Shown: positions 32,630-51,867, counted from the whole stretch's first letter. The stretch: DNA of 63,730 nt, filler included, from Octopus bimaculoides (GCF_001194135.2; 3 parts of 3 records of this genome joined end to end with filler, not necessarily neighbours in it); one strand, 5' to 3'. Notes: generated by a model from the sequence alone, not told the origin. Program-made: numbers and translations.

Positions 32630-32845
32630 CGTCAGTGTAGATACGTTCAATGTAATGTTTCCGAGTCGGTATTTGGCATTCGGATAAAATTCCCTCATCA
32701 CGAATAATCTGGAATCAGGTCTCCATCGTGCTACCGTGGAAGTGAGAAGTGGTCCTTCTGTAACGGTTTTCATTTCGTAAGCGGTGTAACAGCTGTGGTT
32801 AAGTGTTGAATAGTTCTTGGGAACTGCAAACCCAGTTATATTGGC
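32630..32845 (-). CDS. IR/iGluR-like last visible exon (ANITGFAVPKNY...VARWRPDSRLFVMREFYPNAKYRLGNITLNVSTLT)
   Basis: attcttcag / GTAAGA; 72 open codons, phase 0/0. Confidence 0.78.
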
Positions 32846-32899
32846 CTGAAGAATGAGTAAAATTTAATTTTACACTTTTTTAAAATTAAAGCATCTAAT

Positions 32900-33345
32900 T
32901 GAATTTCAGATCCGTCGTCCGACAGCTAATTAGCAGAAACGTTAGATCAGTGGCTTTGGCTCCAGCCTTCTGCATTCTGCGTTCAAATCCCGCTAAGATC
33001 AAGATGACTTTTTCATCGTTTCGTGGGTCAGTAAATAAAGTATCAGAGAAGTTTTGGGATTGATTTTCTCTCTCACACACTATCGGGATTGGGAAAATCT
33101 CATCTGTTGGTCGATTGTAAAGAATTATAATAATAACTCTTTCTAAATTTTGGCACAAACCAAGCAGTTTCTGGGGTGGACGACGATTACATCGACCCCA
33201 GTGTTCGACTGATACGCATTTTGTCGATCCAGAAGGATGGAAGGCAAAGGTGACCTCGGTGAAGTTTGAACTCAGTACGTAAAAACTGAAGAAATGCTGC
33301 TAAGCATTTTGTCTGGCATCCTAACGATTCTACCAGCTCACTGCT
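32900..33345. mobile_element. Inverted pair of family A SINEs
   Basis: Forward copy ~32900-33110, reverse copy ~33140-33345. Confidence 0.7.
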
Positions 33346-33981
33346 TTAGAAGAAATTAGAAATAATGTTGGTGCTTTGTTCAGATAATACATTTTACCGA
33401 ATTTTAACGCCATCGTTCGGCAGCGAAATGGCACAGTCCAACTACGATCAACTTCTCTCTTTGATTTCTTCGGGATCAGTAAATAACGTACCAGTCAAGA
33501 CCTGGGATGGATAAATAGAATTCCAGTCAACTACTGGGCTTAATGTAATCGATTGAGATTTCCCCCTAAAACCGCCGGCCAAATTTGAAAATTTGAACAA
33601 AAAAANNNNNNNNNNNNNNNNNNNNNNNNNNNNNNNNNNNNNNNNNNNNNNNNNNNNNNNNNNNNNNNNNNNNNNNNNNNNNNNNNNNNNNNNNNNNNNN
33701 NNNNNNNNNNNNNNNNNNNNNNNNNNNNNNNNNNNNNNNNNNNNNNNNNNNNNNNNNNNNNNNNNNNNNNNNNNNNNNNNNNNNNNNNNNNNNNNNNNNN
33801 NNNNNNNNNNNNNNNNNNNNNNNNNNNNNNNNNNNNNNNNNNNNNNNNNNNNNNNNNNNNNNNNNNNNNNNNNNNNNNNNNNNNNNNNNNNNNNNNNNNN
33901 NNNNNNNNNNNNNNNNNNNNNNNNNNNNNNNNNNNNNNNNNNNNNNNNNNNNNNNNNNNNNNNNNNNNNNNNNNNNNNNNN

Positions 33982-34046
<65 letters not shown>

Positions 34047-34065
34047 GTGTGTATATTATATATAC

Positions 34066-34190
34066 GCTGGAAAACAATAAAGACTCTCGTTTGTATTATC
34101 CCACGATAATCCTCTGATAAACACTTAATAGTTATCAAGAAAATCACCATGAGTTGTTTGTCGACGTGGTGGCACAAGAAGGAACTTCAT
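34066..34190 (-). pseudogene. Possible decayed IR/iGluR-like exon 8
   Basis: Acceptor cctttaaag, phase 1 EVPSCATTSTNNSW*, then HGDFLDNY* in a shifted frame (resembles ATD C....W.HG..L). The 3' boundary is uncertain. Confidence 0.3.
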
Positions 34191-34723
34191 CTTTAAAGGA
34201 ATGTAAATTTATTTTAATTATATTTTGCATTATTTTTCGATGGGTTTGCTCCAGCGGACAAAATGTTTAGCGGCATTTCGGTCTTTACGTTCTGAGTTCA
34301 AATTCTGCCGAGGTCGACTTTGCCGTTCAACCTTTTGAGGTCGATGAAATAAATACCATTTGGGCACTGGCGGCGATGTGATCAACTTAACACACCCACC
34401 CACCTTGTACCTGTAGTAGACAGGATTATTTTTCGATCGGTTTGGTAATTAATCCTTATCAAGTATTTTATTCCTGAATAGAATATAATGATAAAGCATT
34501 TCCTATTGTTGTTTGCTAAGACCGTATCCTTATCTTCACTTCTTTCTTACTTATCTGTGGCGTATTTCATCACAATATCTTTTCATGGTTTATATTATAG
34601 TTGATTTTATCTCTCGGCAATAACTCTTAGAGATTTCTCACGAGTTTAGTACTATTTAGTCAATTTTTTTCTATTTCTTTTTCTCGTTTGCTTTCCAAGA
34701 GAAATCTATGTTAAGCATATTAC

Positions 34724-34842
34724 CTATAAGTCTTATTAGTTTGATTAAGGAGAGGGAGGCTGCGCCTACGACTTCCGCAGACACTTTGAGGCTGGCAAGA
34801 TCGATACGGTTAATATTCCTTGTAACAGTTACAAATTAACGG
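34724..34842 (-). pseudogene. IR/iGluR-like exon 7 with apparent 1-nt frameshift
   Basis: Strong acceptor tttttcctgcag. It reads PLICNCYKEY*; removing one base gives PLICNCYKNINRIDLASLKVSAEVVGAASLSLIKLIRLI|GTAATA. Confidence 0.55.
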
Positions 34843-35023
34843 CTGCAGGAAAAATACAAATAAGTAGGAAATTATAGAGGATCGATTCTCAGGAGAGGAA
34901 AGACTTGGATTATTGGTTAATATGCGGCCCAAAGAACAAAAACGGCACAAATAAAGGTAGACAAAGAGGAAAAAATTATACATCACAAACAAAATTGATG
35001 CAGTTTTATTACGTTTTACTTAC

Positions 35024-35149
35024 CAGAAATTTGGTGAAATTAGAGCAGTTTGATATAGATTTTAAAGACTCGGGGTTCTCGGACAATTTCACCATTAAAC
35101 AGACAATGGTCAAGATATGCTTCTTTATTGTCTCTTCTGGTAACTGTCC
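35024..35149 (-). CDS. IR/iGluR-like exon 6 (GQLPEETIKKHILTIVCLMVKLSENPESLKSISNCSNFTKFL)
   Basis: ccgatag / GTAAGT; the only fully open frame is phase 0/0. Confidence 0.78.
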
Positions 35150-36136
35150 CTATCGGTGATGAAAAAAAGGGAGATGGCTGTTTTATTGCGGGTAACGTTT
35201 ACACAAAGTGTTCAAAATGTTTATCTGAGAATAGCAAAATAAGTAACAGGATGTTAAGAAGTAATGCAGTACGACCGTTTCAAGCGGCTCCATTTAATTG
35301 ACGAATGTAATCATTACATCAATTTAAATACAGTGCTATCTTTAGCTGCAAGAAATATGGATTTTCAACAGACAAGATATATTGAAATAATTTTTCTTAA
35401 ATATTTTAACAGAGCAAGAGGATGAAAGAATTTCATGTTGTTACTATTGCAGCAAGAATAGCTAAGGGAAGAACAAACTGCAATTTTTAGAGTGGCTAAT
35501 AGGGTTGTAATTAATTTCCAATTTATCTATCGCTTTATCATCAACAAAAAATCTAAGGCTAGAAGATTGTGTATATTTAGCATAAAGAGCAAAGTGAGTT
35601 AACAGCTCATAGCTGGCTGCTGGTCTTAAATTTCATAGTCATAAGTACCCATCAACCCACAAGAAAAAAGAAACTTTACAAAGAGTCAATTAGAAAGTAG
35701 TAAATGTCTATAAAAGATTTTATTCATCTTACATCGAGCTGTACGGACGATCCCGGACTGACTTGGTTCTTCAACTTAAGTACCCAATTCAACTGAATCT
35801 TAATTACTTCTTATATGTGTGTGTATGTGTTTGTGTGTATGTATATATATTTTCTCAGTGTGTACAAATAACAAGGAGAAAATAAATAGCTACCAGGGTA
35901 GCAAAAATTCACACAAGTGCCAAGGATATTATAGCCTACTTATAAAGGTAGAAATTCCAGAGTTAAGGGAAATGTTTTTGTATCACGTCGATAATTTAAG
36001 AAATAGAGTCAAACGCAGGTGTTATTCGTATCATTTCCAACATAATCTCAATGCTTTTTTCGAAACATATGTCGGAAGTATAAATGATTTGAATAACACC
36101 TGCGTTTGACTTAATTTCTTAATCTATCCATATATG

Positions 36137-36167
<31 letters not shown>

Positions 36168-36286
36168 NNNNNNNNNNNNNNNNNNNNNNNNNNNNNNNNN
36201 NNNNNNNNNNNNNNNNNNNNNNNNNNNNNNNNNNNNNNNNNNNNNNNNNNNNNNNNNNNNNNNNNNNNNNNNNNNNNNNNNNNNNN

Positions 36287-36324
<38 letters not shown>

Positions 36325-36436
36325 TAAATAATAAGGATGAAAATTGAATATTAATTTGATTAATATCAATTTAAAACCAGTGGCCTAGCATATTGAAAAA
36401 TCTGAAGATTCAGAAAAATTAAATTACATACATATA

Positions 36437-36574
36437 AGAGGGATGACCACTAAGTGGACATCCATTATTCTAGAAGTAGACTAGCTATGTTCTGACCACT
36501 AAGAAAAGATTGTTAATCTTTTCTTAGTGGTCTACTTCTAACATAATGGATGTCCACTTAGTGGTCATCCCTCT
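36437..36574. mobile_element. 138 bp palindromic MITE flanked by TA
   Basis: TA|AGAGGGATGACCACTAAGTGGACATCC ... GGATGTCCACTTAGTGGTCATCCCTCT|TA, with an inner 18 bp perfect stem. Confidence 0.88.
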
Positions 36575-37243
36575 TATATGTATATGTTATATGTATGTAT
36601 GTATCTGTGTGAGTTTGTCCCCCTCCACCGCCATCGCTTGACAACCGACGTTGGTGTGTTTATGTCCCTGTAACTTTGAGGCTCGGCAAAGAGACCGATC
36701 GAATAAGTGCTTGAGTCGATTTCTTCGATTAACACCCTTTAAGGCGGTGCTCTAGCATGGCTGCAGTCAAATGATTGAAATAAGTGAAAGAATAAAAGAA
36801 TACAGATAGAAAGAGTGAGTGTGTGAGAGAGAGAGAGAGATTACAAGTTAGTAATTGGTCATGATTGATGCAAACACTTTCTCTTTCTTCATATGCACAT
36901 AAAGAAATACGATCACACAGATAGAGAGAGGGAGAGAGAGGCAAAGAGAAAGTGAAATATTAAAATGTCTATTATTTACATTATTTACATTATTTACATT
37001 CGACGGATATTTGTCCTCATCTTGTTTGTTGTTAACACAACATTTCGGCTGAATGTAAATAAATATCTGCCGAATGTAAATAATGTACATAATTCCTCAT
37101 CTCTTAAATATAAAACTGTATTAAAATGTCTGCTGTCAAATAATTCGACGTCGATCAATGACGCCAAATGGGTGGCACCAAAACAGCTGTGCCAAAATGT
37201 CTCATTACCTAGAAGTATTATTATTGCTGTAATAATAACATAC

Positions 37244-37435
37244 CGTCAACTGTATTTCATTGGTTGCTTCTTCAATTGATTTCAAGTCCTCCCGGCAAAT
37301 GTCGCAGGCGTCTTTGAAAATAATCAAATTGGCGTTTCTCGGATTCAGTCCATACTGAACGAGAGACTTCACATCCAGATCATCACTTATCAGAATCCAG
37401 TAATTCCTACTTACCAACATCCAAAGTGACGCCGC
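37244..37435 (-). CDS. IR/iGluR-like exon 5 (AASLWMLVSRNYWILISDDL...NEIQLT)
   Basis: ccgatag / GTATGT; 64 open codons. Confidence 0.82.
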
Positions 37436-38263
37436 CTATCGGATTAAAAAATATGCATTAGTGATTATCTGACGGATATTTTAGTCTGAAGATTATGTAA
37501 ATTTTTTGGGATATTTGTGTATGTGAGACAAATATGTTTTTAAGCATGTTTGTGTGAAAGGGCGATATGTGGGTTTTGAAGGAGCAGGTTTGGTTGTATG
37601 TTTAAGAAGTCAGTTTCAAAACTATGTGGTTTCGGGCTCCGTTCCACTACACAGCAACTTGGGGTCTATCGTCTTCTACTATGACACCGAACGAAACCCA
37701 CCCACCCCATTTGCCCCACAAGAAAAAAAAAGAAAAGAAAAAGAAAGAACAGATACCACAGAATTTAGAAGACCCGACCCCCGGTGAAAAAGGTTACGAA
37801 TGCATGACGGAGAGAATGACGTCACTAAGCGATGGAGAAAGGGGAAAAAGGATTGGACTGAAGGAGAAAAAGGACTTAGGACCTAGAGGCGGCGAGTGGT
37901 GTTACTCAGTGTGGGGTGAGTACCCCACCCTTTATAATATCATTTTCAGATATCATTCATGTTATCATATTTTAATTTGTTTTTCATGTTTATTTTCATG
38001 TGTCATTCATTATATCATATTTTATTTTTATATTTTTGTTATATATCCCCACATGCGTTGTAGTGTCCCCCCTCTGTGTAATGCCTTTATGGCAATTTAA
38101 AAGAAATAAAGAAGATTGCTTCCCAACCACATGGTCCTGGGTTCAGTCCCACTGCGTGTCACCATAGGCAAGTGTCTTGTACTATAGCAGTGGGTTGATC
38201 AAAACCTTTTGAGTGGATTTGGTAGACGGAAAACTGAAAGAAGCCCGTCGTATATAGGTCAGC

Positions 38264-38300
<37 letters not shown>

Positions 38301-38835
38301 TTATTCGTTTATATTTATATAAGGGGCATTACTGCAGAATAATGCCACACACTGGACTTCCCAAAATAAACACATTTAGTACCGAATGCGAGGAAAACAA
38401 CCAACAGAAGAAGACCAACTTTCTTTTAAATAACTCAACTATGTATCGACCGATTTCCTGATAAAATTCTTGTAAAAGAATTTTATCCCTTTTTGAATTT
38501 ATTAATCATATATATATATATGAATGTATGTATGTGTGTATGTATGTACGTATATCTACGTGTGTTTATTTGTGTCTGTGTCTTTGACAACTGATGTTTG
38601 TGTGTTTACGTCCCTTTTACTTAGCGTTTCGGCAAAAGAGGCCCATAGGATAAGTACCAAGCTTTAAAAAATAAGTAATTGGGCCGAATGGTTCGACTAA
38701 AATTTTTCCCGGCGTTGCCTCGGCATGGCCGCAGTCTAATGACTGAAACAAGTAACAGAATAAAGGAATAAAAGAAAAAAATAACTTAAAGGCAAAAACA
38801 AAAAAAAAACTATTTTTTGCTTTCGTTCTTCTTAC

Positions 38836-39032
38836 CTCTTTAATAATGACTTCGAGGGTCTCTTTCTTTAGAATGATGAGGTATCGATTTTCAGAAAAAG
38901 CTTTTTGGTTAATAGAAATAAATGTTCTTCGAATTTTCTCCGTAAAAGAAGAACTGGAATTTATTCGGAAAAGGGCCGATTTAACGTATCTGGATGAAAG
39001 TTCGTTCGTTAACATCAAAACTTCCGTTCCAT
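38836..39032 (-). CDS. IR/iGluR-like exon 4 (GTEVLMLTNELSSRY...RYLIILKKETLEVIIKE)
   Basis: ggtcag / GTAAGA; phase 1/0; open. Confidence 0.82.
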
Positions 39033-40099
39033 CTGACCAACACCAAAAGTAAAACATAAAAACGTCAATTACTATATTTAAGAATAGCGGGTTTCAGCTG
39101 CTGGCTTAAGGGGGGACACTAGCAATCGCTGACAAAATTTCCAGAGACCCACAGGAAAAAAAAAAACACCATCTACCACATAGTTACTTACTTAAGCATT
39201 TCGCTCCCTATGTAGCGTAGGTCGTTGATGAGTTTTTCTCCTGTTTTTGACCCTGGGTTCACTTACCCTGGAGGAAGGACTTACCCAGGTCTTGTTAGTT
39301 TTATATTGATTTCAAATTTTGACACAAGGCCAACAACTTCGGGAGGCAGGGCAAGTCAATTACATCAACCCCAGTGTTCAACTGGTTCTCATTGTATCGA
39401 CCCCGAAAAGATTAAAGGCAAAGTCAACCTCGGCAGAATTTGAACTCAGGACGTAAGGACGAAAGGCTGGGTTTATATTGTCATCGATGCTTCTGAATTT
39501 TGTTTTTGTACAAAGTAATGATGTTGGTCCCACACGATCCCATTTTTTTATCTCTGGGGAGAAATGCTCCGTATTAGTTTGGCCCCTATCCTTTGACCTG
39601 TCCAATATAGAAGACCCTATCAGGAGGGCAAAGATCCCAGAGTCATTGAGGCCCACAAGCCACTATATCGCAACAAAGACTAGACCTTACAGTGGACCTA
39701 CCAAAAATTATAAAAATATTAATTCTTAAGTCTGCCCAATATATGATCATGCATTTGATTGTGTTAATTGTTTTCCATTAAATTGCATTATTTAGAGTTT
39801 AATTAAATTTGTTCTGCTTAATTTTGTATTTAATTCACTTGATTTTATATTCAAGTGGTTCATGAAAATAATTAACTTGGTCCAAGATAAGAAGTCAGTT
39901 AAGAGTCCTGAACTTAGAATTAACTTTGCTTAATACTTTAAGGAGTAGGTTAGAAGAGAAGAGATAAAGAGACTGACTAAATAGTTCATGTAATGACTGC
40001 ATTACAATTTTGCTGTTGTTTAGACTCAAGCTTGACCTCACCGATCTCTGAACATTTTTTTTTACCTTATATTAACGAGTCAAAATGATATTCAGTATG

Positions 40100-40555
40100 T
40101 TATATTGAAAAACCATATTTCATAAAGAACTCGAGAGCCTCCAACGAGTAAATAATTTCTAGGGAAGTTTTTGGAACAGTCCCATCAAGATTCCCGTCTA
40201 CTGTAAACCTAACAGGCCACATACTGCTGCGTGGGACTAATAAGAAATATATATGTCCTGTCATAGAGAGCAGTTGCTCCGCTGATGTGAATATCTCTTC
40301 AAAAAGAAAGAGAAATAAGATAACTACGGACGACTGATTCGAAACCTCCAGTTTCTATATCCAGATTATAAATTCATTATTTATACCAATCATAATTGGT
40401 GCACTTGGTTTTGTGAGTAAATGCCGATGTGACAGCCTGGATAAGCTAGGTCTTTCAGAAGATGAAATCAACCAGCTAATTCGCATACTACAAATACAAT
40501 CTGTAAGCGTAACTGTAAAAATATGTAAAACAATTGCCAAATTTAAAATGTGAAA
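40100..40555 (+). mobile_element. REL-endonuclease (R2/R4/NeSL-type) non-LTR retrotransposon C-terminal fragment
   Basis: Decayed CPVIESSCSADVNIS.K...IPIIIGALGFV...QIQSVSVTVKICKT..F*. Confidence 0.55.
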
Positions 40556-40772
40556 TGGTTTTTGTTAGCTGGAGGTTCGTGTCTTTGTTACAAACTAACT
40601 CCTCACTTAAAGGAAAACTTCAAATAATTAAAAATAGAAGAGAAGATAGATAGATAAGGAAATTGATAGATAGAGAAACAGACGATAGAATGACAGACAG
40701 AATAACTGACAAACAGACAGAGAAAGATATGGATAAGAGGCATTAGAAGTACCAAGAACTACCAAGTCTTAC

Positions 40773-41018
40773 TTATAGATTCATCATAGAATATCTTCAC
40801 GTCTGGCCACTTTAGATGGTGCATGGCATCGGCTAAGCCTTTGAATTTTTGGCTGCTTCCTCCTCCTTTTCTTCCGACTGGGTCTTTAGCTGAACATTTC
40901 TCTTCAGTCAGGAATAACATCACCGCTTCACTGGACACTTTATTCGGTAGGAAGTCAAGCATGTTGCACGATACCAACCAAATAATGAGATCAATGTCTT
41001 CCCTCACGACATCGTGTA
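40773..41018 (-). CDS. IR/iGluR-like exon 3 (HDVVREDIDLIIW...ADAMHHLKWPDVKIFYDESI)
   Basis: tttattag / GTAAGA; 81 open codons. Confidence 0.82.
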
Positions 41019-41680
41019 CTAATAAAGAAAATAGTAATAGATATGAAATATGGCATTTATATATACATACACACTCACACGCATACACACCCTCACACAC
41101 ACCCTCACAGATATATATATGTATATATATATATATATATATATNNNNNNNNNNNNNNNNNNNNNNNNNNNNNNNNNNNNNNNNNNNNNNNNNNNNNNNN
41201 NNNNNNNNNNNNNNNNNNNNNNNNNNNNNNNNNNNNNNNNNNNNNNNNNNNNNNNNNNNNNNNNNNNNNNNNNNNNNNNNNNNNNNNNNNNNNNNNNNNN
41301 NNNNNNNNNNNNNNNNNNNNNNNNNNNNNNNNNNNNNNNNNNNNNNNNNNNNNNNNNNNNNNNNNNNNNNNNNNNNNNNNNNNNNNNNNNNNNNNNNNNN
41401 NNNNNNNNNNNNNNNNNNNNNNNNNNNNNNNNNNNNNNNNNNNNNNNNNNNNNNNNNNNNNNNNNNNNNNNNNNNNNNNNNNNNNNNNNNNNNNNNNNNN
41501 NNNNNNNNNNNNNNNNNNNNNNNNNNNNNNNNNNNNATATATACTGTGCAAAAGACAACGCGTGCGTTCTGTCGTGAAACATAGGGTAAAAAATCAGATA
41601 TTAATTAATATCGATTTATTACCAGGAAGCTAGCACATTTATAATATATATATAAATATATACATAAAATATATAGCTAC

Positions 41681-41818
41681 CTAAGCCATCCAAAAATACT
41701 GGGTCCATTGAGCTGACATTATACATCTCAAATGTTACTCTCATGTTGATTCTATGGCATATGTATTCCTTCAGGTCAATCAGTCCATCATGGTATTTAC
41801 TGTGTTCTATTACGGCGG
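41681..41818 (-). CDS. IR/iGluR-like exon 2 (AVIEHSKYHDGLIDLKEY...MDPVFLDGL)
   Basis: cttttcag / GTAGCT; phase 1/1; open. Confidence 0.75.
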
Positions 41819-42093
41819 CTGAAAAGTTACAAAGTATAACATACCATGTTAATTTTTACTTAGCAAGACAATAAAATGATTTACAAACATCTTTATTATT
41901 ATTGTTGCTGTTGTTGCTGTTGTTGTTATTGTTGTTGTTAAGGCAGCGAACTGGCATCATTGCTAGTACGCCGGATAAAATGCTTTTCCTATATTTTGTC
42001 CGTCCTTATTATCTGAGTTCAAATTCTGCCAAGGTCCACAGTGACTTTCATACATATACCTGTAGACACACACATATATCTACATATACATAT

Positions 42094-42127
<34 letters not shown>

Positions 42128-43169
42128 ATATATATATATATANNNNNNNNNNNNNNNNNNNNNNNNNNNNNNNNNNNNNNNNNNNNNNNNNNNNNNNNNN
42201 NNNNNNNNNNNNNNNNNNNNNNNNNNNNNNNNNNNNNNNNNNNNNNNNNNNNNNNNNNNNNNNNNNNNNNNNNNNNNNNNNNNNNNNNNNNNNNNNNNNN
42301 NNNNNNNNNNNNNNNNNNNNNNNNNNNNNNNNNNNNNNNNNNNNNNNNNNNNNNNNNNNNNNNNNNNNNNNNNNNNNNNNNNNNNNNNNNNNNNNNNNNN
42401 NNNNNNNNNNNNNNNNNNNNNNNNNNNNNNNNNNNNNNNNNNNNNNNNNNNNNNNNNNNNNNNNNNNNNNNNNNNNNNNNNNNNNNNNNNNNNNNNNNNN
42501 NNNNNNNNNNNNNNNNNNNNNNNNNNNNNNNNNNNNNNNNNNNNNNNNNNNNNNNNNNNNNNNNNNNNNNNNNNNNNNNNNNNNNNNNNNNNNNNNNNNN
42601 NNNNNNNNNNNNNNNNNNNNNNNNNNNNNNNNNNNNNNNNNNNNNNNNNNNNNNNNNNNNNNNNNNNNNNNNNNNNNNNNNNNNNNNNNNNNNNNNNNNN
42701 NNNNNNNNNNNNNNNNNNNNNNNNNNNNNNNNNNNNNNNNNNNNNNNNNNNNNNNNNNNNNNNNNNNNNNNNNNNNNNNNNNNNNNNNNNNNNNNNNNNN
42801 NNNNNNNNNNNNNNNNNNNNNNNNNNNNNNNNNNNNNNATATATATATATATATACACGCATACATATACACATGTATGTGTGTATATATGTGCGTGTGT
42901 ATGTGCATCAGTGCGTGTTTGTGTGTGCGTGTTAAGATTGATGAAGGGAACGTACATGCATAAAGAAGGGGATTTGTACATATAAATATAAAGCTATAGA
43001 TATATACGTGTACACAAACATACGTACAGACATCCATATAAACATGCATACATGCAAACATACATACATACATAAATAAACGCATACATACATGCGTACG
43101 TACGTACACATAGAAAGCAAGCAAAAATGCAAAGTGGAATGGAGGAAAAAGTCGATGAACATATTATCA

Positions 43170-43245
43170 ATATAATCATTACTTATTATGACGCTTCACA
43201 TCACATCATCATCGTTATCATCACTATCCTCACCAACATCATCAA

Positions 43246-43289
<44 letters not shown>

Positions 43290-43410
43290 ACATTACCATT
43301 ATAATCATCATCATCATCATCACCATTGACAGCGTCATAATCCTCACCACATCATCTCATCATCATCATCATCATTTTCATCATCATCATCAAAATCATA
43401 GTCGCCGTGG

Positions 43411-43454
<44 letters not shown>

Positions 43455-43772
43455 TTCATCATCACCATCATCATCGTCTTCATCATCACCATCACTATCA
43501 CGGCAGCCATCCATCACTATCATCATTTACATCATTATCGCCAAGATCATCATCATGATTATCATCATCATCATCATCACCATCGTCAACAACAACAACA
43601 ACAGCAACAACAACATCACTTGTATTGTTTTTATTGTAAGCGGTATTTCGCCAGCGTCGTTCAGTTATTTTTTTTGTGTTACTTTTCTTATTCTTTTCTT
43701 CTTTTATTTTATTTTGTCCTTCATTACATATGACGAGTTCTGTAACTGTTAAGTGTTATTATTGGTCTTGTA

Positions 43773-43823
<51 letters not shown>

Positions 43824-43900
43824 GTTATTGCTGTTGTTGTTTTCTTTTATTGATATTAACGTTGTTGTTATTGTTATTGTCTTCGTTATCGCTGTCTTCG
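43170..43900. repeat. Compound (CAT)n/(CAA)n/(TAT)n/(TGT)n microsatellite block
   Basis: Seen directly. Confidence 0.95.
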
Positions 43901-44375
43901 TTATAACTGTTGTTGCTTTCACAGCTGTAGATATCGATTTAAGACATATCCGTCTGCTTGTTTACCTGTCTGTATGACTGTCTGATTGGCTGGCTAGATG
44001 ACTGACTGGCTGGCTGGCTGGTTGGCTGGTGGTCTGTCTACCTGTCTGGTGGTCTGTCTGTCTTTGTTCTTCTTTCTTTCCTTATTCTTTTGTACCCCGT
44101 CTTATTGAAGATTGCTTGTGGCATTCTCTTTACGTTAATTTAGACTGTAAAGCCGTTGAAAGTAGGTTTAAGAATTGTTTGTATAATTACTGAAGAAGAT
44201 TGGAGATTGTGTATATGCACATAATATATATATATGCATATGTATATATGAACATATATATGCTCGTATATATGTTCATTAGAATTATATATACACAGTA
44301 TATGTACACATATATGTCCATATATGTCATATGTACATAATATACATGTATATATGAATTTAAGTGTGCGTGTAC

Positions 44376-44452
<77 letters not shown>

Positions 44453-44589
44453 NNNNNNNNNNNNNNNNNNNNNNNNNNNNNNNNNNNNNNNNNNNNNNNN
44501 NNNNNNNNNNNNNNNNNNNNNNNNNNNNNNNNNNNNNNNNNNNNNNNNNNNNNNNNNNNNNNNNNNNNNNNNNNNNNNNTATCTATGTA

Positions 44590-45000
44590 TATGTAAGTCA
44601 CTTACAGCAGATGTATACATCAACCAACTGGATGTAATGATGAATGAACTTGTAATTAAACAACTGAGATTGGTCAAAAGAGACCGGCCAATTCTCTTGC
44701 AAGACAATGCTCGACCACATGTTGCACAAAGAACGCTACTCAGGTAACAGGAACTGAACTTGGAAGAACTCTGTCATCCACCACATTCGCCAGACCTTGC
44801 ACTAACTAGCTATCACGTTTTCCAGGTATTAGAAAACGTGAAGCTCAGTTAGAAACGTGATTTGCAATGAAAAAACTCAAATCTGAAGATGCAAAAACAG
44901 CCTTTCGTGTTTTCATCACCTCTTGTTCTCCAGAATTCTTCGCTGCCGGCATAAATAAGCTAACGAGAAAATGGCAAAACTATATGCACGCCAAACTATA
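44590..45000 (+). mobile_element. Mariner transposase 3' fragment
   Basis: TADVYINQL...PILLQDNARPHVA...HPPHSPDLA...EFFAAGINKLTRKWQ. Confidence 0.88.
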
Positions 45001-45192
45001 TAAGCGCATCTGAACACCCACATAAAAATATATACTTGCACACGCCGCCCCTTCATATATGTGTGTATGAGTATGTATATATATGTATTGATGGACAGAT
45101 AGATATATGTATGTATGTATGTATATATATGTATGTACGTATGTATGTATGTATGCATGCATGCATGCATGTATGTATGTATGTATGTGTAT

Positions 45193-45224
<32 letters not shown>

Positions 45225-46611
45225 TGCACACACAGACATACATACACAGGCATACACACACACGCACAAACACACACAAAGACACAAACACATACGCAAA
45301 AACACACACAAACGCACACATACACACGCATATATTATTTCTTCTATGTATTTATTCTTTCACTTGTTTCAGTCATTAAACTGCAACCATGCTGGAGCAA
45401 CGACTAGAAAAATTTATATTGTTTTAAAGCCTATCGCTCTCTTTTGCCGAATCGCTAATAAGAAATGACAGAAACAGAAAATGGAATTCTCTAGATTCTT
45501 TATTAATCACAACGATCGTTTCGGCCCATCTTACATCGCTCCGTCGCTGCTAAGACACTATACAGCTGGTTATGATGCATCCTTCGGTGTAGATGTGTCT
45601 CGCCAGGCGACTTTTCAAAAGGTACCTCGCTCAATAAATACGGTTTCGTTTGGTTCTATTTTTTAGCATGTCGTTATTTGCCTGTACGTTGTTCCCTATA
45701 GGCTTCGGTGGCTGCCTGGTGAGAAGCTTGCTTCCCAACTACATGGTTCGGGTTCAGTTAGACTGGATAACACCAAGGGCAGCTGCCTTCGACTATAGTC
45801 TCAAGCAGACCAAAGCCTTCTGAGTGGATTTGGTAGACAGAAACTGAAAAAAGCCCGTCGTATATATATATATATATATNNNNNNNNNNNNNNNNNNNNN
45901 NNNNNNNNNNNNNNNNNNNNNNNNNNNNNNNNNNNNNNNNNNNNNNNNNNNNNNNNNNNNNNNNNNNNNNNNNNNNNNNNNNNNNNNNNNNNNNNNNNNN
46001 NNNNNNNNNNNNNNNNNNNNNNNNNNNNNNNNNNNNNNNNNNNNNNNNNNNNNNNNNNNNNNNNNNNNNNNNNNNNNNNNNNNNNNNNNNNNNNNNNNNN
46101 NNNNNNNNNNNNNNNNNNNNNNNNNNNNNNNNNNNNNNNNNNNNNNNNNNNNNNNNNNNNNNNNNNNNNNNNNNNNNNNNNNNNNNNNNNNNNNNNNNNN
46201 NNNNNNNNNNNNNNNNNNNNNNNNNNNNNNNNNNNNNNNNNNNNNNNNNNNNNNNNNNNNNNNNNNNNNNNNNNNNNNNNNNNNNNNNNNNNNNNNNNNN
46301 NNNNNNNNNNNNNNNNNNNNNNNNNNNNNNNNNNNNNNNNNNNNNNNNNNNNNNNNNNNNNNNNNNNNNNNNNNNNNNNNNNNNNNNNNNNNNNNNNNNN
46401 NNNNNNNNNNNNNNNNNNNNNNNNNNNNNNNNNNNNNNNNNNNNNNNNNNNNNNNNNNNNNNNNNNNNNNNNNNNNNNNNNNNNNNNNNNNNNNNNNNNN
46501 NNNNNNNNNNNNNNNNNNNNNNNNNNNNNNNNNNNNNNNNNNNNNNNNNNNNNNNNNNNNNNNNNNNNNNNNNNNNNNNNNNNNNNNNNNNNNTATATAA
46601 GCAATGTTAAT

Positions 46612-46647
<36 letters not shown>

Positions 46648-46860
46648 CTAGCAGAGATACCGGGCCTTGGTAGGGATTCAAACGGTGACTGGAAAGTGTG
46701 ACCGAAGATATTTGCAATGATAGACAGGGAGACAGGATACTAAAATAGTCTCAATGTCATCAATGCGTAGAATGCAAATGAATGAGTCAGCAAAAAAAGG
46801 GTAGATGGAGAAATTATATTCAGTTTCGTATTCTGCAACAAGCAGAAATAATGATCAAAT
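46648..46860 (-). mobile_element. Possible Helitron 3' end
   Basis: Plus-strand A-CTAG followed by a GC-rich imperfect hairpin (ataccgggccttggtaggg). Confidence 0.35.
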
Positions 46861-46899
46861 AGAAAGTCGGTCAAGCAGCCTGTAAGCAAAACATTCATT

Positions 46900-47270
46900 C
46901 GAATTGTGACATTTGTCAAGATTTCTGATCGATAATGTGCAGAGATGATGAGTAGAATAAGTAAGCATTGAGCGTGGTTTGAAATCTATGTAAACAGGTT
47001 ATTTTGTCAACAGATGATTTTTTAATCTTTATTGTGTTGGCTGGCGCCTGTAATTTGCTTAGTTGTGGCAAATACATTGCCAATTGGCGATAAAATTTGA
47101 TAATTGTGTGTCCAATACAACAGTTAGAGTCATGAAGTTTGCAGTTGTTATGTTGGGTACACACTTTTGTAAAATACTTTGTTTTTCTGAAATTTGTTCA
47201 GTGATTTACAAGTTTGCGTGCTTGTAGAGTTGTAGTGTATTCTTGAAGAGGATTTTTCTGCTATTACAAA
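46900..47270 (-). mobile_element. Decayed Penelope-like RT fragment
   Basis: FYKSVYPT...CIGHTIIKFYRQLAMYL resembles PLE RT (LYPTG..S.IGT.TY.LAKYL); multiple stops. Confidence 0.4.
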
Positions 47271-47367
47271 GGGTATTCAAATTCATTTATACCATAAAGC
47301 TATAATACTGGACCCTGTCAAAATATTACATTAAAGCACTCATTCAAAAATACATGAACATATATAT

Positions 47368-47780
47368 AGGCGAAGTGTGGATGTGTGGTAAGGAGATTGC
47401 TTCCTAACCACATGGTTCTGGGTTCAGTCCCATTGCAAGGCACCTTGCGCAGGTGTCTTCTACTAATAACCTCGGGGCGACCAAAGCCTTTTGAGTGGAT
47501 TTGGTAGACGGAAACTGAGAGAAACCCGTCGTATATGTACGTATGTGCATGTGTGTGTGCGTGCGTGTGTGTGTGTGTGTTAGTGATTGTTCTCCACCAC
47601 GGTTTGACAACCGGTGTTAGTGTGTTCACGTCCCCGTTACTTAGCGATTCAGCAAAAGCCGCCGATAGAATAAGTATGGAGTTTTACAAAAAATAAGTAC
47701 TGGGATCGATTCGTTCGACTAAAATTTTTCAAGACGGTGCTCCAGCATGGCCACAGTCTAATGACTGAAACAAGTAAAAA
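47368..47780 (+). mobile_element. Full-length family B SINE (CpG-retaining copy)
   Basis: ggcgaagtgtggatgtgtggtaag head, ggtagacggaaactg, cgtccccgttacttagcg, tail. Confidence 0.85.
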
Positions 47781-48874
47781 GATGAAATATATTAAATTTA
47801 CGAGACTCTAAAAGGGATATAAAAGTTGTAAAGGATAATGGTTGAAGGGAAAACATGGTAGGGAAAGCCACGGTTGAGGTTTGATGTTTTGAGCAGGAAA
47901 ACATATTGGAGGAAGTGGATAGTGGATAGACTGGGCGTAGGATGGACCGAGAATGGATTAAGAGAAAAAGGAGAATTAATAAGTCGGCAGAGTCTGATTG
48001 GAGGTGCTACGAGAGACATTGTGAGGAAAGAACTGTTACGTTTGTAAATATCGATTAGAGTGAATCAGTGAGAAACATAACGACATAACGACAATTGGTT
48101 GAAGTAGTTCAACTCCATCGGTTTCCGTCTACCAAATCCACTCACAAGGATTTGGTCGGCCCTACGCTATAGTAGAAGACGCATTCCCACGGTGCCACGC
48201 AAATAGATGGCCGCACTTTGGATCACTCGGGTAAATTGTTTTATGGTCTGTATTCTATAAGCCACATCTCTCAAGGACTCTGACGTTTGGGAGGAGGAGA
48301 AACAGATTAGCGTCAAATGCAATGTATTTGATGCGCAGATTCCTTACAGTTTCTGTCAACTTAATTTCACTGACAAAACATCGGTCGACTCGAAGTTATA
48401 AATAATTGTCCTAGGACAGATGGACCGAACTATGCCTTTAGAACACTGAATAAAAATAAATATTCGACCGGTGACACATCGATGCATTTATAATTAAGGC
48501 ATGATTTAGTATAAAGACTTCTACGAAGTCTTAATATTTTATACTTTATACTTTATAAATAACGTAGAGACGTCATCTGCATGAAAAGTAATAGCAAAGT
48601 TAGTGTCATAATATTTAACGGTAAGAGCTTTATGTATTAAATCAGAAATAATTGACCGGCGAGGGAGAAAAATACAGTAGCTCAATGGTTAATATTGATT
48701 TAACCATTTTTAAAATTACGAAAGACAACTCTGGGTGTGTTTTAGTTTTAGACCTTATCAGCGAAGCATGCAATTTAATAAAGACGTAATGAGAGTATCA
48801 CTTATTAGATATTCAATATTGTATAGCAGTAGAGTAATTTCACTTTTGTGGTTTATTTCATATAAATATCTTAC

Positions 48875-48950
48875 CAATTTTCAGATGATCCAAGTTAGTT
48901 TGACCCACGATTTGTTTTCCTAACGCCAGAACCAGAAGTAACAGGTACAT
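48875..48950 (-). CDS. IR/iGluR-like exon 1, signal peptide (MYLLLLVLALGKQIVGQTNLDHLKI)
   Basis: Acceptor atttcag precedes 48967; hydrophobic N-terminus; donor GTAAGA, phase 1. Confidence 0.8.
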
Positions 48951-49199
48951 CGCTGGTTATTTGTCACCTGAAATAGTAAAAATATTGAAAAGCTGTCTTG
49001 AAGTAACAGCAACATATGTAATAGAAGTGAGAGAAGGAAGAGGAGAAGGGGTGGCTTTTGTTTACAAAACGAAAGAAAGCAAAAAGTGGAAATTTTCAGA
49101 TGATGAATGAGTTTTCACCTTTTCATACTTTCATTATGCTTACATATATGCATATTTTGTATTTGATGTATTTAATATATTCAGTATATTTGATATTTT

Positions 49200-49625
49200 C
49201 TACTCAAGGGACAAGGCCCGAAATTTTGGGGGAGGGGACCAGTCGATTAGATTGACCCCAGTACGCAACTGGTACTTAATTTATCGACCCCGAAAGGATG
49301 AAAAGCAAAGTCGACCTCGGCGGAATTTGAACTCAGAACGTAAAGACAGACGAACTACCGCTAAGCATTTCTCCCAGCATGCTAACGTTTCTTATTTCTT
49401 TATTGCCCACAAGGGGCTAAACATAGAGGGGACAAACAAGGACAAACAAAAGGATTATGTCGATTATATCGACCCCAGTATGTAACAGGTACTTAATTTA
49501 TCGATCCCGAAAGGATGAAAGGCAAAGTTGACCTAGGCGGAATTTGAACTCAGAACGTAACGGCAGACGAAATATCGCTAAGCATTTCGTCCGGCGTGCT
49601 AACGTTTCTGCCAGCTCGCCGCCTT
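49200..49625 (-). mobile_element. Tandem pair of family A SINEs
   Basis: Two consecutive reverse copies, with gtcgacctcggcggaatttgaactc intact in the first. Confidence 0.85.
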
Positions 49626-49990: not shown

Positions 49991-50502
49991 GCGGACTGCT
50001 TTATTACTGATAGAAAATGGCGCATCAACACAATGGGAGAAACCATTATTAAATGTCAGCAATCTTGTAAATATATGTTCAAACGCAGAATTAAAGCACT
50101 TGAAGAATCAGATACGGTTATAACGTTTCCGTTGTAAGTATCGTTCACATAATGCACGTGTGTGCGTGTGTGTGTGTGTATAGAGAGGGACACACACACA
50201 CACACTCACACATGCATACACACACGCTCACACATGCGTACACACATACACACACTCACACACATATATATATGCTAATACATACGCATGCATATTTATA
50301 TGCAGCTATGCATGTGCGTGCATATACATATGTGTGCATGCGTCTGGGAGTCTGTGAATGTATGTGAGCGTGCGTATGTTTGTTTACATTTTTAGATCGA
50401 TGAAATCAGTAAAATATGTTATTCTTTACTTGGAAAAAGAAATAAGGTGTTTATTAGAAAGGGCAAGTATGGAAAAATGAGCTAAAGCAAAAAGAATACA
50501 TC

Positions 50503-50655
50503 TGTGTGTGTGTGGAAACAATTGTCGGGATTAATAAACATTCTGGTATCTTCCATCTTCCGTTTTTCATTTGCCATACGTGTGTATGTGCGCGCGCGCG
50601 TGGAAACAATTGTCGTGATTAATAACAATTCTCGTACCTTCCTCTTTCGTTTGCC

Positions 50656-50694
<39 letters not shown>

Positions 50695-50756
50695 GAAACA
50701 ATTGTCGGGATTGATAAAAATTCTGGTATCTTCCATCTTCCGTCTTTCATTTACAA

Positions 50757-50793
<37 letters not shown>

Positions 50794-50870
50794 AAACAAT
50801 TTTGGGGATTAATAAAAATGGTGGTATCTTCCATCTTCCGTGTTTCATTTACAATGTGTGTGTGTGTGTA
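50503..50870. repeat. Compound minisatellite: ~60 bp unit + (TG)n, 4 copies
   Basis: ggaaacaattgtcgggattaataaa.attctggtatcttccatcttccgt.tttcattt repeated. Confidence 0.9.
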
Positions 50871-51867
50871 AGTATGTATGTATGTATGTATGTATGTATG
50901 TATCATATAACTGTCCTAACTCAAATATTGAATATCAGTAGCCTTGCTGAAATAAAATACTTCTGGTGTGCATCATGTATATAGTAAGTACATATATAGT
51001 AATATTGAAATCTTCAATTAAATTATCATTGTGATTAGGAGACAAAAGCTCCCTATAAATGTCTGTATGTCCGAGTTTGTATATCTTGTGTGCGTGTGCC
51101 TGATATATCTTTATGTGAGGTTAGGTTATGAGTTCAAGTGCTGGCGACGCCTTGTGTCCGCCCTTAACCAACACACTTTATTCCCCGTTACTATACACCA
51201 CTCAACTGGCAAAAATAATTCAAAGGGCCAACCTTGTCACATCCTGAGTCACGTTGACTCTCCCAGAAGTTTATTTTAATTGTACGCGTGTGTGTGTGTG
51301 TGTGTGTGTGTGTGGAGTACTCAGCCACTTGCTGGTTAATTTTATGAGCAGACTGTATCGTGGATCACCGACTGGAACCCGTGTCGTGTACGTGACGGAG
51401 TGCTAGTGTGTGTATGCGCGTGTGAGTGTGCTCGTGTGTGTGTGTTTATGCGTAGATATGTGTATATATGGGCATACATATGTATGTGTGTATGGACGTA
51501 TACTGTAAGATATTCGCCACTTTTAATATTAAAAACAACTTACCAATTTGGTACAGAAAATATAAACTCAAAAACGTCAAGTCTCAGGAAGTAAACCAAC
51601 CGTTCTGCTGAGGACAGAGGATAACGTTTGTTGTTTTTATACACTACCACCAATACTACTACCAACACCTCTACCGTTACTACTGCCACTACGACCTAAA
51701 AAACCACTACCTCCGTCCACCACCGCTGCATCCATCACTCCCGTTGCCTTCTAAAACACACACCATCTTCCCAACGTCTCTAACTCACTGTAGGAGACGT
51801 CAATTACCGCCAGTTCGATAATTGATTCTATATTGCAGAATCATTATTTTATTACGATGTGGTAGTG

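What the first reader, a model, noticed from the sequence alone, without database searches (positions are those of the whole stretch)
32630..48950. Hidden, highly divergent ionotropic-receptor-like gene next to WDR89
Seen: six consecutive GT-AG, phase-matched exons give a 325 aa open product beginning with a signal peptide, and a further clean 72-codon exon lies at 32630-32845. Knowledge: motifs ADAMHHLKWPDVKIFYD, IIKEAASLWM..NYWILI and VARW.P..L..FYPN...NITLNVSTL resemble the iGluR/IR amino-terminal domain and its junction with S1. Inference: a lineage-specific, fast-evolving IR/iGluR-type receptor (possibly chemosensory) that the ORF track shows only as scattered fragments.
Basis: partly seen in the sequence, partly recalled or inferred. 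Interest (0 to 1): 0.8.

Follow-up and report, generated by a model that had tools for sequence, protein, structure and literature searches.

The report
Annotated divergent octopus glutamate-receptor-family gene

Summary
On the minus strand, seven GT-AG, phase-matched coding exons give an open 397-aa product that runs off the piece. They are 48950-48875, 41818-41681, 41018-40773, 39032-38836, 37435-37244, 35149-35024 and 32845-32630. A 5'UTR exon ends at about 51544. RNA contigs of about 2.9 kb from two runs, plus a 599-nt contig from a third, join the exons base for base. All six assembly gaps lie in introns.

The product is 100% identical to RefSeq XP_014773477.1, "glutamate receptor ionotropic, delta-1" of Octopus bimaculoides, so the gene is not hidden. 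The window encodes the signal peptide, the amino-terminal domain (ATD) and the first strand of S1. The rest (S1, M1-M3, S2, M4) lies beyond the piece. Gapless O. vulgaris DNA gives a clean 13-exon, 819-aa reading frame.

The ATD is very divergent. It falls below Pfam's ANF_receptor cut-off, and a profile search of 1.84 billion proteins finds one non-cephalopod hit. It is nevertheless under purifying selection (dN/dS 0.16 against O. vulgaris).

The ligand pocket keeps the Arg and Thr but, in the orthologues, lacks the acidic residue that holds glutamate's amino group. That resembles variant iGluRs (IRs). A chemosensory role is untested.

The parts
51544..51666 (-). 5'UTR exon (exon 0). Its 3' end is at 51544/5 with a GTAAGT donor. 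The 5' limit is only the end of the RNA contigs, so the true transcription start may lie further upstream.
   Evidence: A 122-nt loose end of the RNA contigs lies upstream of E1. Its first 30 nt match uniquely at 51545-51574. An in-frame stop lies just upstream of the ATG.
48875..48967 (-). Coding exon 1: 17 nt of 5'UTR, the ATG at 48950, and 25 codons plus 1 nt (MYLLLLVLALGKQIVGQTNLDHLKI). The signal peptide is inferred from the hydrophobic stretch.
   Evidence: RNA contigs in X13, X14 and X15 cover 48875-48968 and run on into E2.
41681..41818 (-). Coding exon 2 (138 nt, phase 1 to 1), start of the ATD.
   Evidence: It is the only open AG..TTAG|GT candidate of the right phase. The same RNA contigs cover it at record positions 216-354.
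40773..41018 (-). Coding exon 3 (246 nt), ATD, holds ADAMHHLKWPDVKIFYD.
   Evidence: RNA contig record positions 351-600. Splice sites.
38836..39032 (-). Coding exon 4 (197 nt), ATD, ends ...LEVIIKE.
   Evidence: RNA contig record positions 601-798..
37244..37435 (-). Coding exon 5 (192 nt), ATD, AASLWMLVSRNYWILISDD...
   Evidence: RNA contig record positions 799-990..
35024..35149 (-). Coding exon 6 (126 nt, in frame), ATD lobe 2. The public O. vulgaris model skips it, but it is present and conserved in O. vulgaris DNA.
   Evidence: RNA contig record positions 991-1116. Orthologous exon in L003 at 44077-44202, 95% nt identity.
32630..32845 (-). Coding exon 7 (216 nt, 72 codons): end of the ATD, the ATD-S1 linker and the first S1 strand (NITLNVSTLT). 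The frame continues; the next exon is off the piece.
   Evidence: RNA contig record positions 1117-1331, with 1563 more nt of contig downstream. The Pfam Lig_chan-Glu_bd match starts at residue 390.
32846..48874 (-). Introns 1-6, holding all six assembly gaps, (TA)n/(TG)n microsatellites, SINE-like repeats and a CAT-rich low-complexity tract (43127-43950).
   Evidence: RNA contigs are contiguous across all joints.

Best explanation
Window 32630 to about 51666, minus strand, is the 5' half of a 13-coding-exon gene: one 5'UTR exon plus coding exons 1-7. The gene encodes a divergent non-NMDA-type (AMPA/kainate/delta-like) ionotropic glutamate receptor family subunit of Octopus bimaculoides, already in RefSeq as XP_014773477.1.

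The window's exons encode the signal peptide, a clamshell amino-terminal domain of the periplasmic-binding-protein-1 / ANF_receptor type, and the first strand of ligand-binding segment S1. The remaining six exons lie beyond the piece. They encode S1, M1, the pore loop, M3 (YFTANLTAYF in place of SYTANLAAF), S2, M4 and a short tail, giving about 819 aa in total.

Shown: gene structure, transcription and splicing, family membership of the core, conservation under purifying selection in Octopus and Argonauta.

Inferred: the protein assembles through its ATD into tetrameric ligand-gated cation channels. The pocket keeps the Arg and Thr that hold an alpha-carboxylate. In the O. sinensis, O. vulgaris and Argonauta orthologues it has Leu/Trp where glutamate receptors have the Glu/Asp that holds the alpha-amino group. 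It also has hydrophobic residues where AMPA/kainate receptors have the Ser/Thr that hold the distal carboxylate. The agonist is therefore probably not glutamate. More likely it is some other small carboxylate-bearing ligand, or the subunit is a non-binding partner. That makes it a variant (IR-like) iGluR whose tissue and ligand are unknown.
For: Structure and RNA:
- Seven GT-AG phase-matched exons give a 397-aa open product.
- RNA contigs of 2894 nt (X14) and 2973 nt (X15) carry E1-E7 contiguously, and a 599-nt contig (X13) carries E1-E3.
- RNA runs labelled as three other organisms also hold words of the exon-containing stretches.

Identity:
- 100% identity and 100% coverage to P0001 = XP_014773477.1, with Pfam Lig_chan-Glu_bd at 86 bits and Lig_chan at 63 bits.
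- The O. sinensis orthologue XP_036368701.1 has a full Lig_chan match including M4.
- Gapless O. vulgaris DNA gives a clean 13-exon 819-aa ORF, and Argonauta DNA holds the corresponding exons.
- The RNA contig length of 2894 nt fits 140 nt of UTR plus 2460 nt of CDS plus about 294 nt of 3'UTR.

Core class: phmmer against the PDB gives GluK2 139.5, GluA2 138.3 and GluD1 136.1 bits over S1 to M4. GluN3 scores only about 56 bits.

ATD:
- Weak ANF_receptor hits fall at the same profile region in three orthologues, E 0.003-0.05.
- The ATD profile hits the ATD of Haliotis XP_067672970.1 (E 1.3e-6 in 1.84e9 proteins), which itself passes ANF_receptor at 51.6 bits.
- hhalign gives 95.7% probability.
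- BLASTP is colinear from ATD to M4, 261 bits.
- The top 50 Foldseek matches of the model are all iGluR ATDs, E about 1e-8.

Constraint: dN/dS is 0.156 (dS 0.16) against O. vulgaris over E1-E7.

Pocket: residue mapping comes from the HMMER alignments to GluK2 and GluA2 and to Haliotis. The SLWSEVKLY stretch is identical in Argonauta.
Against: - The ATD does not reach Pfam's ANF_receptor cut-off (14.4 bits against 25.4).
- The two AlphaFold models are poor (mean pLDDT 36.6 and 44.7). Foldseek TM-scores are only 0.25-0.30, and Haliotis rows in the alignment may have steered the second model.
- The O. bimaculoides exons for the second half of S2 and M4 are not in the assembly stretches I could read. 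The pocket's missing acidic residue is therefore read from orthologues, and its exact column differs between two alignments (Leu or Trp).
- No channel or ligand activity has been tested.
- Expression is low in three raw RNA runs, with a few reads per exon in the 6% sampled and no joint passing the listing threshold.
- Tissue is unknown.
Confidence: 0.9

Rival explanations
1. It is a chemosensory ionotropic receptor (IR) in the strict sense. That means a member of the protostome IR clade, expressed in suckers or the olfactory organ, and gated by environmental chemicals together with an IR25-type co-receptor.
For: - An IR-like loss of a glutamate-contacting residue.
- Strong divergence and narrow taxonomic spread: only cephalopod hits plus one Haliotis hit.
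- Patchy presence among RNA runs of the same species. Four hold it, and eight other listed runs hold no words of it.
- Molluscan IR clades (IR25, IR-A to IR-D) and IR25 expression in Sepia suckers and olfactory organ are described (PMC11682238, citing Andouche et al. 2021).
Against: - It keeps a full-length ATD of about 385 aa. By my knowledge of Croset et al. 2010, only IR25a and IR8a among IRs do.
- It is not IR25. No highly conserved IR25 relatives appeared in any search.
- No phylogeny was made.
- Run and tissue labels are coded, so expression in a chemosensory organ is not shown.
Confidence: 0.2
2. It is a true delta-class (GluD) orthologue, as the RefSeq name says. It would act mainly as a trans-synaptic organiser through its ATD or as a D-serine/glycine/GABA-modulated receptor.
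For: - The RefSeq name, given by best hit.
- GluD1 is the top PDB hit for the truncated O. bimaculoides model, and a very weak sub-threshold alignment of the ATD is in register with the GluD1 ATD.
- The top Foldseek hits are GluD1 and GluD2 ATDs.
- The nearest non-cephalopod relative, from Haliotis, scores marginally best to GluD1 with its ATD aligned.
Against: - With the full-length orthologue, GluK2, GluA2 and GluD1 score the same (139.5, 138.3, 136.1 bits), so no class is preferred.
- The acidic pocket residue that delta receptors use for D-serine is absent.
- Deltas are reported as poorly represented in molluscs (PMC6307864).
Confidence: 0.15
3. It is a decaying or non-functional gene copy, or an artefact of annotation across assembly gaps. 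The public O. bimaculoides model ends prematurely in S2.
For: - XP_014773477.1 stops at 656 aa with 'VD*' read from intron sequence.
- All four public models are incomplete in different ways.
- Expression is low.
Against: - dN/dS is 0.16, with conserved splice sites.
- Intact 13-exon ORF in gapless O. vulgaris DNA, and the corresponding exons in Argonauta.
- The spliced 2.9-kb RNA contigs have a length that fits a full 819-aa CDS.
- The truncation coincides with N-runs downstream in the same scaffold.
Confidence: 0.04

Closest known systems
RefSeq XP_014773477.1, 'glutamate receptor ionotropic, delta-1' [Octopus bimaculoides], with orthologues XP_036368701.1 (O. sinensis), the O. vulgaris 'glutamate receptor 2-like' model and Argonauta hians Ahia01_001282500
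   Same: It is the same gene: 100% identity over the window's 397 aa. The orthologues are 94% (O. vulgaris, E1-E7) and about 53% (Argonauta ATD) identical, with the same exon structure.
   Different: The RefSeq model lacks the last two exons (second half of S2, M4, tail) because of assembly gaps. The window adds a 5'UTR exon. The 'delta-1' label is a best-hit name that the scores do not support.
Vertebrate AMPA / kainate / delta receptors (GluA2, GluK2, GluD1; solved structures 3kg2, 5kuf, 6ksp)
   Same: The domain order is the same: signal peptide, ATD, S1, M1, pore loop, M3, S2, M4. The S1 Arg and the PLT Thr are kept. There is an M3 gate motif of the SYTANLAAF type.
   Different: - Only about 136-140 bits to any of them.
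- The ATD is not recognisable by sequence.
- The GluA2 E705 / GluK2 E738 position is Leu or Trp.
- The GluA2 S654/T655 positions are Ala/Ile in O. sinensis and Val/Leu in O. bimaculoides.
- The gate motif is YFTANLTAYF.
- The Q/R position aligns to Ser.
Haliotis asinina / H. rubra 'glutamate receptor ionotropic, delta-1-like' (XP_067672970.1, XP_046562924.1)
   Same: This is the closest non-cephalopod relative found: 27% identity, 261 bits, colinear from ATD to M4. It is the only non-cephalopod hit of the ATD profile.
   Different: The Haliotis ATD passes Pfam ANF_receptor at 51.6 bits. Its pocket keeps an Asp at the alpha-amino position, and its M3 is canonical SYTANLAAF.
Variant iGluRs / ionotropic receptors (IRs) of protostomes, including the molluscan IR25 and IR-A to IR-D clades and the 'mollusc-specific' GluR-m clades (Andouche et al. 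2021, as cited in PMC11682238; PMC12837371)
   Same: It is a divergent iGluR relative that has lost one of the three canonical glutamate-contacting residues, and it has a narrow lineage distribution.
   Different: It has a full ATD. Clade membership was not tested here. It carries both Pfam domains used to build the published 312-sequence molluscan set (two cephalopod species), so it may already be in that set, but I could not check.

Membership tests
iGluR superfamily (ionotropic glutamate receptor-type ligand-gated channels) | Bipartite S1/S2 ligand-binding domain (Pfam Lig_chan-Glu_bd PF10613, SBP_bac_3) | tested here: met
   PF10613 scores 86.2 bits (cut-off 30) at residues 390-497 of XP_014773477.1, and PF00497 scores 35.6 bits. 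Only the first strand (NITLNVSTLT, exon 7) lies in the window.
iGluR superfamily (ionotropic glutamate receptor-type ligand-gated channels) | Channel module M1, pore loop, M3 and M4 (Pfam Lig_chan PF00060) with an SYTANLAAF-type gate | tested here: met
   PF00060 scores 62.7 bits in the O. bimaculoides model and 78.9 bits, covering profile positions 3-143 of 146 including M4, in the O. sinensis orthologue. The motif is YFTANLTAYF. These parts are encoded outside the window.
iGluR superfamily (ionotropic glutamate receptor-type ligand-gated channels) | Amino-terminal domain of the PBP1 / ANF_receptor fold (PF01094) ahead of S1 | tested here: inconclusive
   Direct Pfam scores are 13-17 bits against a cut-off of 25.4. 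Support is indirect:
- profile hit E 1.3e-6 to a Haliotis ATD that passes PF01094;
- hhalign 95.7%;
- Foldseek top 50 all iGluR ATDs at E about 1e-8, but TM 0.25-0.30 on a model with pLDDT 44.7.
Delta class (GluD), as named by RefSeq | Closer to GluD than to AMPA/kainate receptors (clade membership) | tested here: inconclusive
   GluK2 139.5, GluA2 138.3 and GluD1 136.1 bits. No tree was made because reference sequences were lacking.
Glutamate-binding iGluRs | Pocket triad: S1 Arg (GluA2 R485), S1 Thr (T480), S2 Glu/Asp (E705) | tested here: not met
   Arg and Thr are present (GPLTLTQERSQVIDY). The E705/E738 column is Leu (GluK2 and Haliotis alignments) or Trp (GluA2 alignment) in the O. sinensis and O. 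vulgaris orthologues, and the stretch is identical in Argonauta. The O. bimaculoides exon itself is not in the sequence I could read.
Protostome chemosensory IRs | Loss of one or more glutamate-contacting residues | tested here: met
   See the row above.
Protostome chemosensory IRs | No ATD (except the co-receptors IR25a and IR8a) | tested here: not met
   About 385 aa of ATD are encoded by exons 1-7. No IR25-like close relatives were found in any search. The feature itself is from my knowledge of Croset et al. 2010.
Protostome chemosensory IRs | Placement inside the IR clade, and expression in chemosensory tissue | not testable with these tools
   No IR reference sequences could be fetched, and run, sample and tissue labels are coded.

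The most novel reading that the evidence does not exclude
The gene founds a cephalopod-restricted orphan clade of full-length iGluRs. Members are Octopus, Argonauta and a more distant unannotated copy in contig L002. Its ATD has diverged past recognition. Its pocket has been rebuilt (Arg kept, acidic residue lost, hydrophobic S2 wall) and then frozen by selection. On this reading it is a receptor for a non-amino-acid ligand, possibly an external chemical sensed in suckers or the olfactory organ alongside the known nicotinic-type chemotactile receptors.
Probability: 0.15. Interest if true: 0.6.

Novelty: already known. Interest (0 to 1): 0.2.

Why it matters
As it stands, the result is mostly housekeeping.

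Two modest points have practical value:
- Every public model of this gene is incomplete in a different way. A full 13-exon, 819-aa model can be read from O. vulgaris DNA, and the O. bimaculoides model can be extended by a 5'UTR exon.
- The 'delta-1' name is not supported. The conserved loss of the amino-group-binding acidic residue marks this as a variant iGluR whose ligand is probably not glutamate.

If it proved to be expressed in chemosensory tissue, it would add an iGluR-type receptor to the octopus chemosensory repertoire. Functional work on that repertoire has so far centred on nicotinic-type chemotactile receptors.

Tried and rejected
1. A 'tandem paralogue' in O. vulgaris. Searches seemed to show a second copy at L003 3001-15779. 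This was my error: /data/L003.fa also holds record L004 (Argonauta), and the BLAST table lacked subject ids. I withdrew it. No paralogue is shown.
2. AlphaFold on the ATD with 3 and then 7 sequences gave mean pLDDT 36.6 and 44.7. That is too poor for a structural claim, so the Foldseek result is used only as a weak pointer.
3. The search for homologous proteins with the S1-TMD segment alone returned nothing at E<=1e-20, not even the protein itself. This looks like a limit of the word index and is not evidence.
4. phmmer of the isolated S2 segment against the PDB found nothing. The full-length orthologue was needed.
6. Raw reads from three 2026 RNA runs gave only a few reads per exon, and no joint passed the threshold.
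7. Literature: the accession is cited in none of the held papers. Andouche et al. 2021 is not held, and no supplements are held for PMC11682238.
8. The piece holds no tRNA genes.


Full report
**The piece.** The finding's piece (31242-56169) is 36% G+C and holds seven blocks of sequence separated by six N-runs. It is identical to part of chromosome CM046624.1 of the Octopus bimaculoides assembly GCA_001194135.2. That assembly carries the same gaps, and the piece itself is bounded by gaps.

**Observation.** The coding exons are:
- E1: 48950-48875
- E2: 41818-41681
- E3: 41018-40773
- E4: 39032-38836
- E5: 37435-37244
- E6: 35149-35024
- E7: 32845-32630

All have AG acceptors and GT donors and match in phase.
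- E7 is the 72-codon exon and follows E6 in phase 0, giving 397 open codons that continue past 32630.
- The quoted motifs are all present.

**RNA evidence.** Public RNA runs of the same organism hold about half of the 31-mers of exon-containing stretches. Laid on the window, a single 2894-nt contig (run X14) and a single 2973-nt contig (X15) cover E1, E2, E3, E4, E5, E6 and E7 with contiguous record coordinates. A 599-nt contig (X13) covers E1 to E3.
- Nothing is left over between exons. No exon of this isoform is therefore hidden in a gap, and no reading frame has to cross a gap. All six gaps are intronic, which answers the scan program's request.
- The contigs also show that E1 begins at an acceptor at 48967/8 and is spliced to a 5'UTR exon ending at 51544/5 with a GTAAGT donor. 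The 30-nt loose end matches uniquely at 51545-51574. An in-frame stop lies just upstream of the ATG.
- The contigs continue 1563 nt beyond E7, so the gene runs off the piece.
- RNA runs labelled as three other organisms also hold words of the exon-containing stretches.
- In three raw 2026 RNA runs only a few reads per exon were seen in the 6% sampled, so expression there is low.

**What it is.** The 397-aa product is 100% identical over its whole length to a 656-aa protein held by NCBI as XP_014773477.1, 'glutamate receptor ionotropic, delta-1 [Octopus bimaculoides]'.
- That protein has Pfam Lig_chan-Glu_bd (86 bits), Lig_chan (63 bits) and SBP_bac_3. The gene is not hidden.
- UniProt also has a 246-aa fragment from the first annotation (A0A0L8HCY6).
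- Its further exons map downstream in the same scaffold, outside the window piece.
- The RefSeq model ends 'VD*' by running into the intron after exon 11, in a stretch full of N-runs.

The orthologues fill in the rest:
- The O. sinensis orthologue XP_036368701.1 (769 aa, N-terminally truncated) carries the rest of S2, M4 and a short tail.
- From gapless O. vulgaris DNA (L003) I could thread a clean 13-exon, 2460-nt, 819-aa frame.
- Argonauta hians DNA (L004) holds the corresponding exons too, including the three that its public model skips.
- An 819-aa CDS plus 140 nt of 5'UTR leaves about 294 nt of 3'UTR in the 2894-nt O. bimaculoides RNA contig.

**Family placement.** Against solved structures, the full-length orthologue scores GluK2 139.5, GluA2 138.3 and GluD1 136.1 bits over S1 to M4. 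GluN3 relatives score about 56 bits.
- It is therefore a non-NMDA-type iGluR that no vertebrate class claims. The 'delta-1' name is a best-hit label.
- It is far from everything. The word-indexed search of 5.8 billion proteins found only Octopus and Argonauta orthologues, one annelid protein at 29% identity, and GluN3s.

**The ATD, which is the part in the window.**
- Pfam ANF_receptor is hit at the same profile region in three orthologues, but at 13-17 bits against a cut-off of 25.4.
- An exhaustive HMMER search of 1.84 billion representative proteins with an ATD-only profile found six proteins. Three were the family itself. Two were exon-sized fragments. The sixth was one full-length Haliotis iGluR (E 1.3e-6, ATD positions 108-261 to 105-255).
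- That Haliotis protein passes ANF_receptor at 51.6 bits over 79-368. It aligns colinearly with the octopus protein from ATD to M4 (27% identity, 261 bits). hhalign gives 95.7% probability.
- AlphaFold models were poor (pLDDT 36.6 and 44.7). The better one nevertheless drew only iGluR ATDs as its top 50 Foldseek matches (GluD1, GluD2, GluA2, GluK2/3/5; E about 1e-8), with low TM-scores of 0.25-0.30.
- Together with its position ahead of S1, this makes a PBP1-type ATD the only sensible reading. The formal family threshold is still not met, and I mark that test inconclusive.
- One of the exon-sized fragments lies on a 756-kb ENA contig of unknown organism (L002). That contig holds colinear exons E3, E4, E5 and E7 at 40-47% identity. 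This is a more distant, unannotated orthologue.

**Selection.** The seven window exons all have orthologous exons with conserved splice sites in O. vulgaris. Amino-acid identity is 94%, dS is 0.16, dN is 0.026 and dN/dS is 0.156. The domain is divergent from other iGluRs but is not evolving fast now, and it is not a pseudogene.

**Likely mechanism.** The order of domains and the intact pore module imply a subunit of a tetrameric ligand-gated cation channel.
- In the alignments to GluK2, GluA2 and Haliotis, the S1 Arg and the PLT Thr that hold an alpha-carboxylate are kept.
- The Glu/Asp that holds the alpha-amino group (GluA2 E705, GluK2 E738, Asp in Haliotis) is Leu or Trp.
- The S2 Ser/Thr pair (GluA2 S654/T655) is Ala/Ile in O. 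sinensis and Val/Leu in O. bimaculoides.
- The SLWSEVKLY stretch is identical in Argonauta, so the altered pocket is conserved.
- The M3 gate reads YFTANLTAYF.
- By the criterion used for IRs, this is a variant iGluR that probably does not bind glutamate.
- Its ligand and tissue are unknown. It keeps a full ATD, unlike most IRs, and it is not IR25.

**Literature.**
- Molluscan iGluR/IR repertoires have been catalogued. A set of 312 proteins from ten molluscs, including two cephalopods, was selected by the same two Pfam domains this protein carries. It defines IR25, IR-A to IR-D and mollusc-specific GluR-m clades (PMC11682238, citing Andouche et al. 2021; also PMC12837371).
- Deltas are said to be poorly represented in molluscs (PMC6307864).
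- I could not read Andouche et al., and the accession appears in no held paper. Whether this gene already has a clade name is therefore open.

**Verdict.** The chemosensory suggestion is untested. This is an already annotated gene of a known kind, with a divergent ATD and an IR-like pocket. Interest is low.

Noticed in passing
window 53059-53807, minus strand: A broken LINE-type reverse transcriptase. Two overlapping ORFs in different frames hit Pfam RVT_1 at 23 and 28 bits, below the 29.6 cut-off. It lies upstream of the receptor gene's 5'UTR exon.
   Followed up: partly
window 39355-39505, 49242-49392, 49459-49609; and 36698-36796, 38666-38764, 47688-47786: Two families of short dispersed (SINE-like) repeats lie in the introns and upstream region. 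RNA contigs and reads pile on these regions at depths of hundreds to tens of thousands, dwarfing the gene's own signal. ARAGORN calls no tRNA.
   Followed up: partly
window 43127-43950: An intronic CAT/ATC-rich low-complexity tract gives long poly-His, poly-Asp, poly-Ile and poly-Met ORFs on both strands.
   Followed up: no
window gaps 33606-33981, 36168-36286, 41145-41536, 42143-42838, 44453-44579, 45880-46593: The gaps are bordered by (TA)n or (TG)n microsatellites. The chromosome-level assembly GCA_001194135.2 carries the same gaps unchanged.
   Followed up: yes
L001 35778-36005; L003 30900-54876; L004 3001-15779: All four public protein models of this gene are incomplete in different ways:
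- The O. bimaculoides model stops in the intron after exon 11.
- The O. sinensis model lacks exon 1 and half of exon 2.
- The O. vulgaris model skips exon 6 and the transmembrane exons.
- The Argonauta model skips exons 7-9.
The genomic DNA of O. vulgaris and Argonauta holds the full exon set.
   Followed up: yes
L002 8506-18781 (ENA ERZ21867824, contig ctg123305l): A contig of unknown organism (34% G+C) carries colinear exons matching E3, E4, E5 and E7 at 40-47% amino-acid identity. This is probably a distant cephalopod orthologue that is called only as exon-sized fragments.
   Followed up: partly
window 50478-50853: Four tandem copies of a unit of about 95 nt, each starting with a (TG)n run, lie between exon 1 and the 5'UTR exon.
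   Followed up: no
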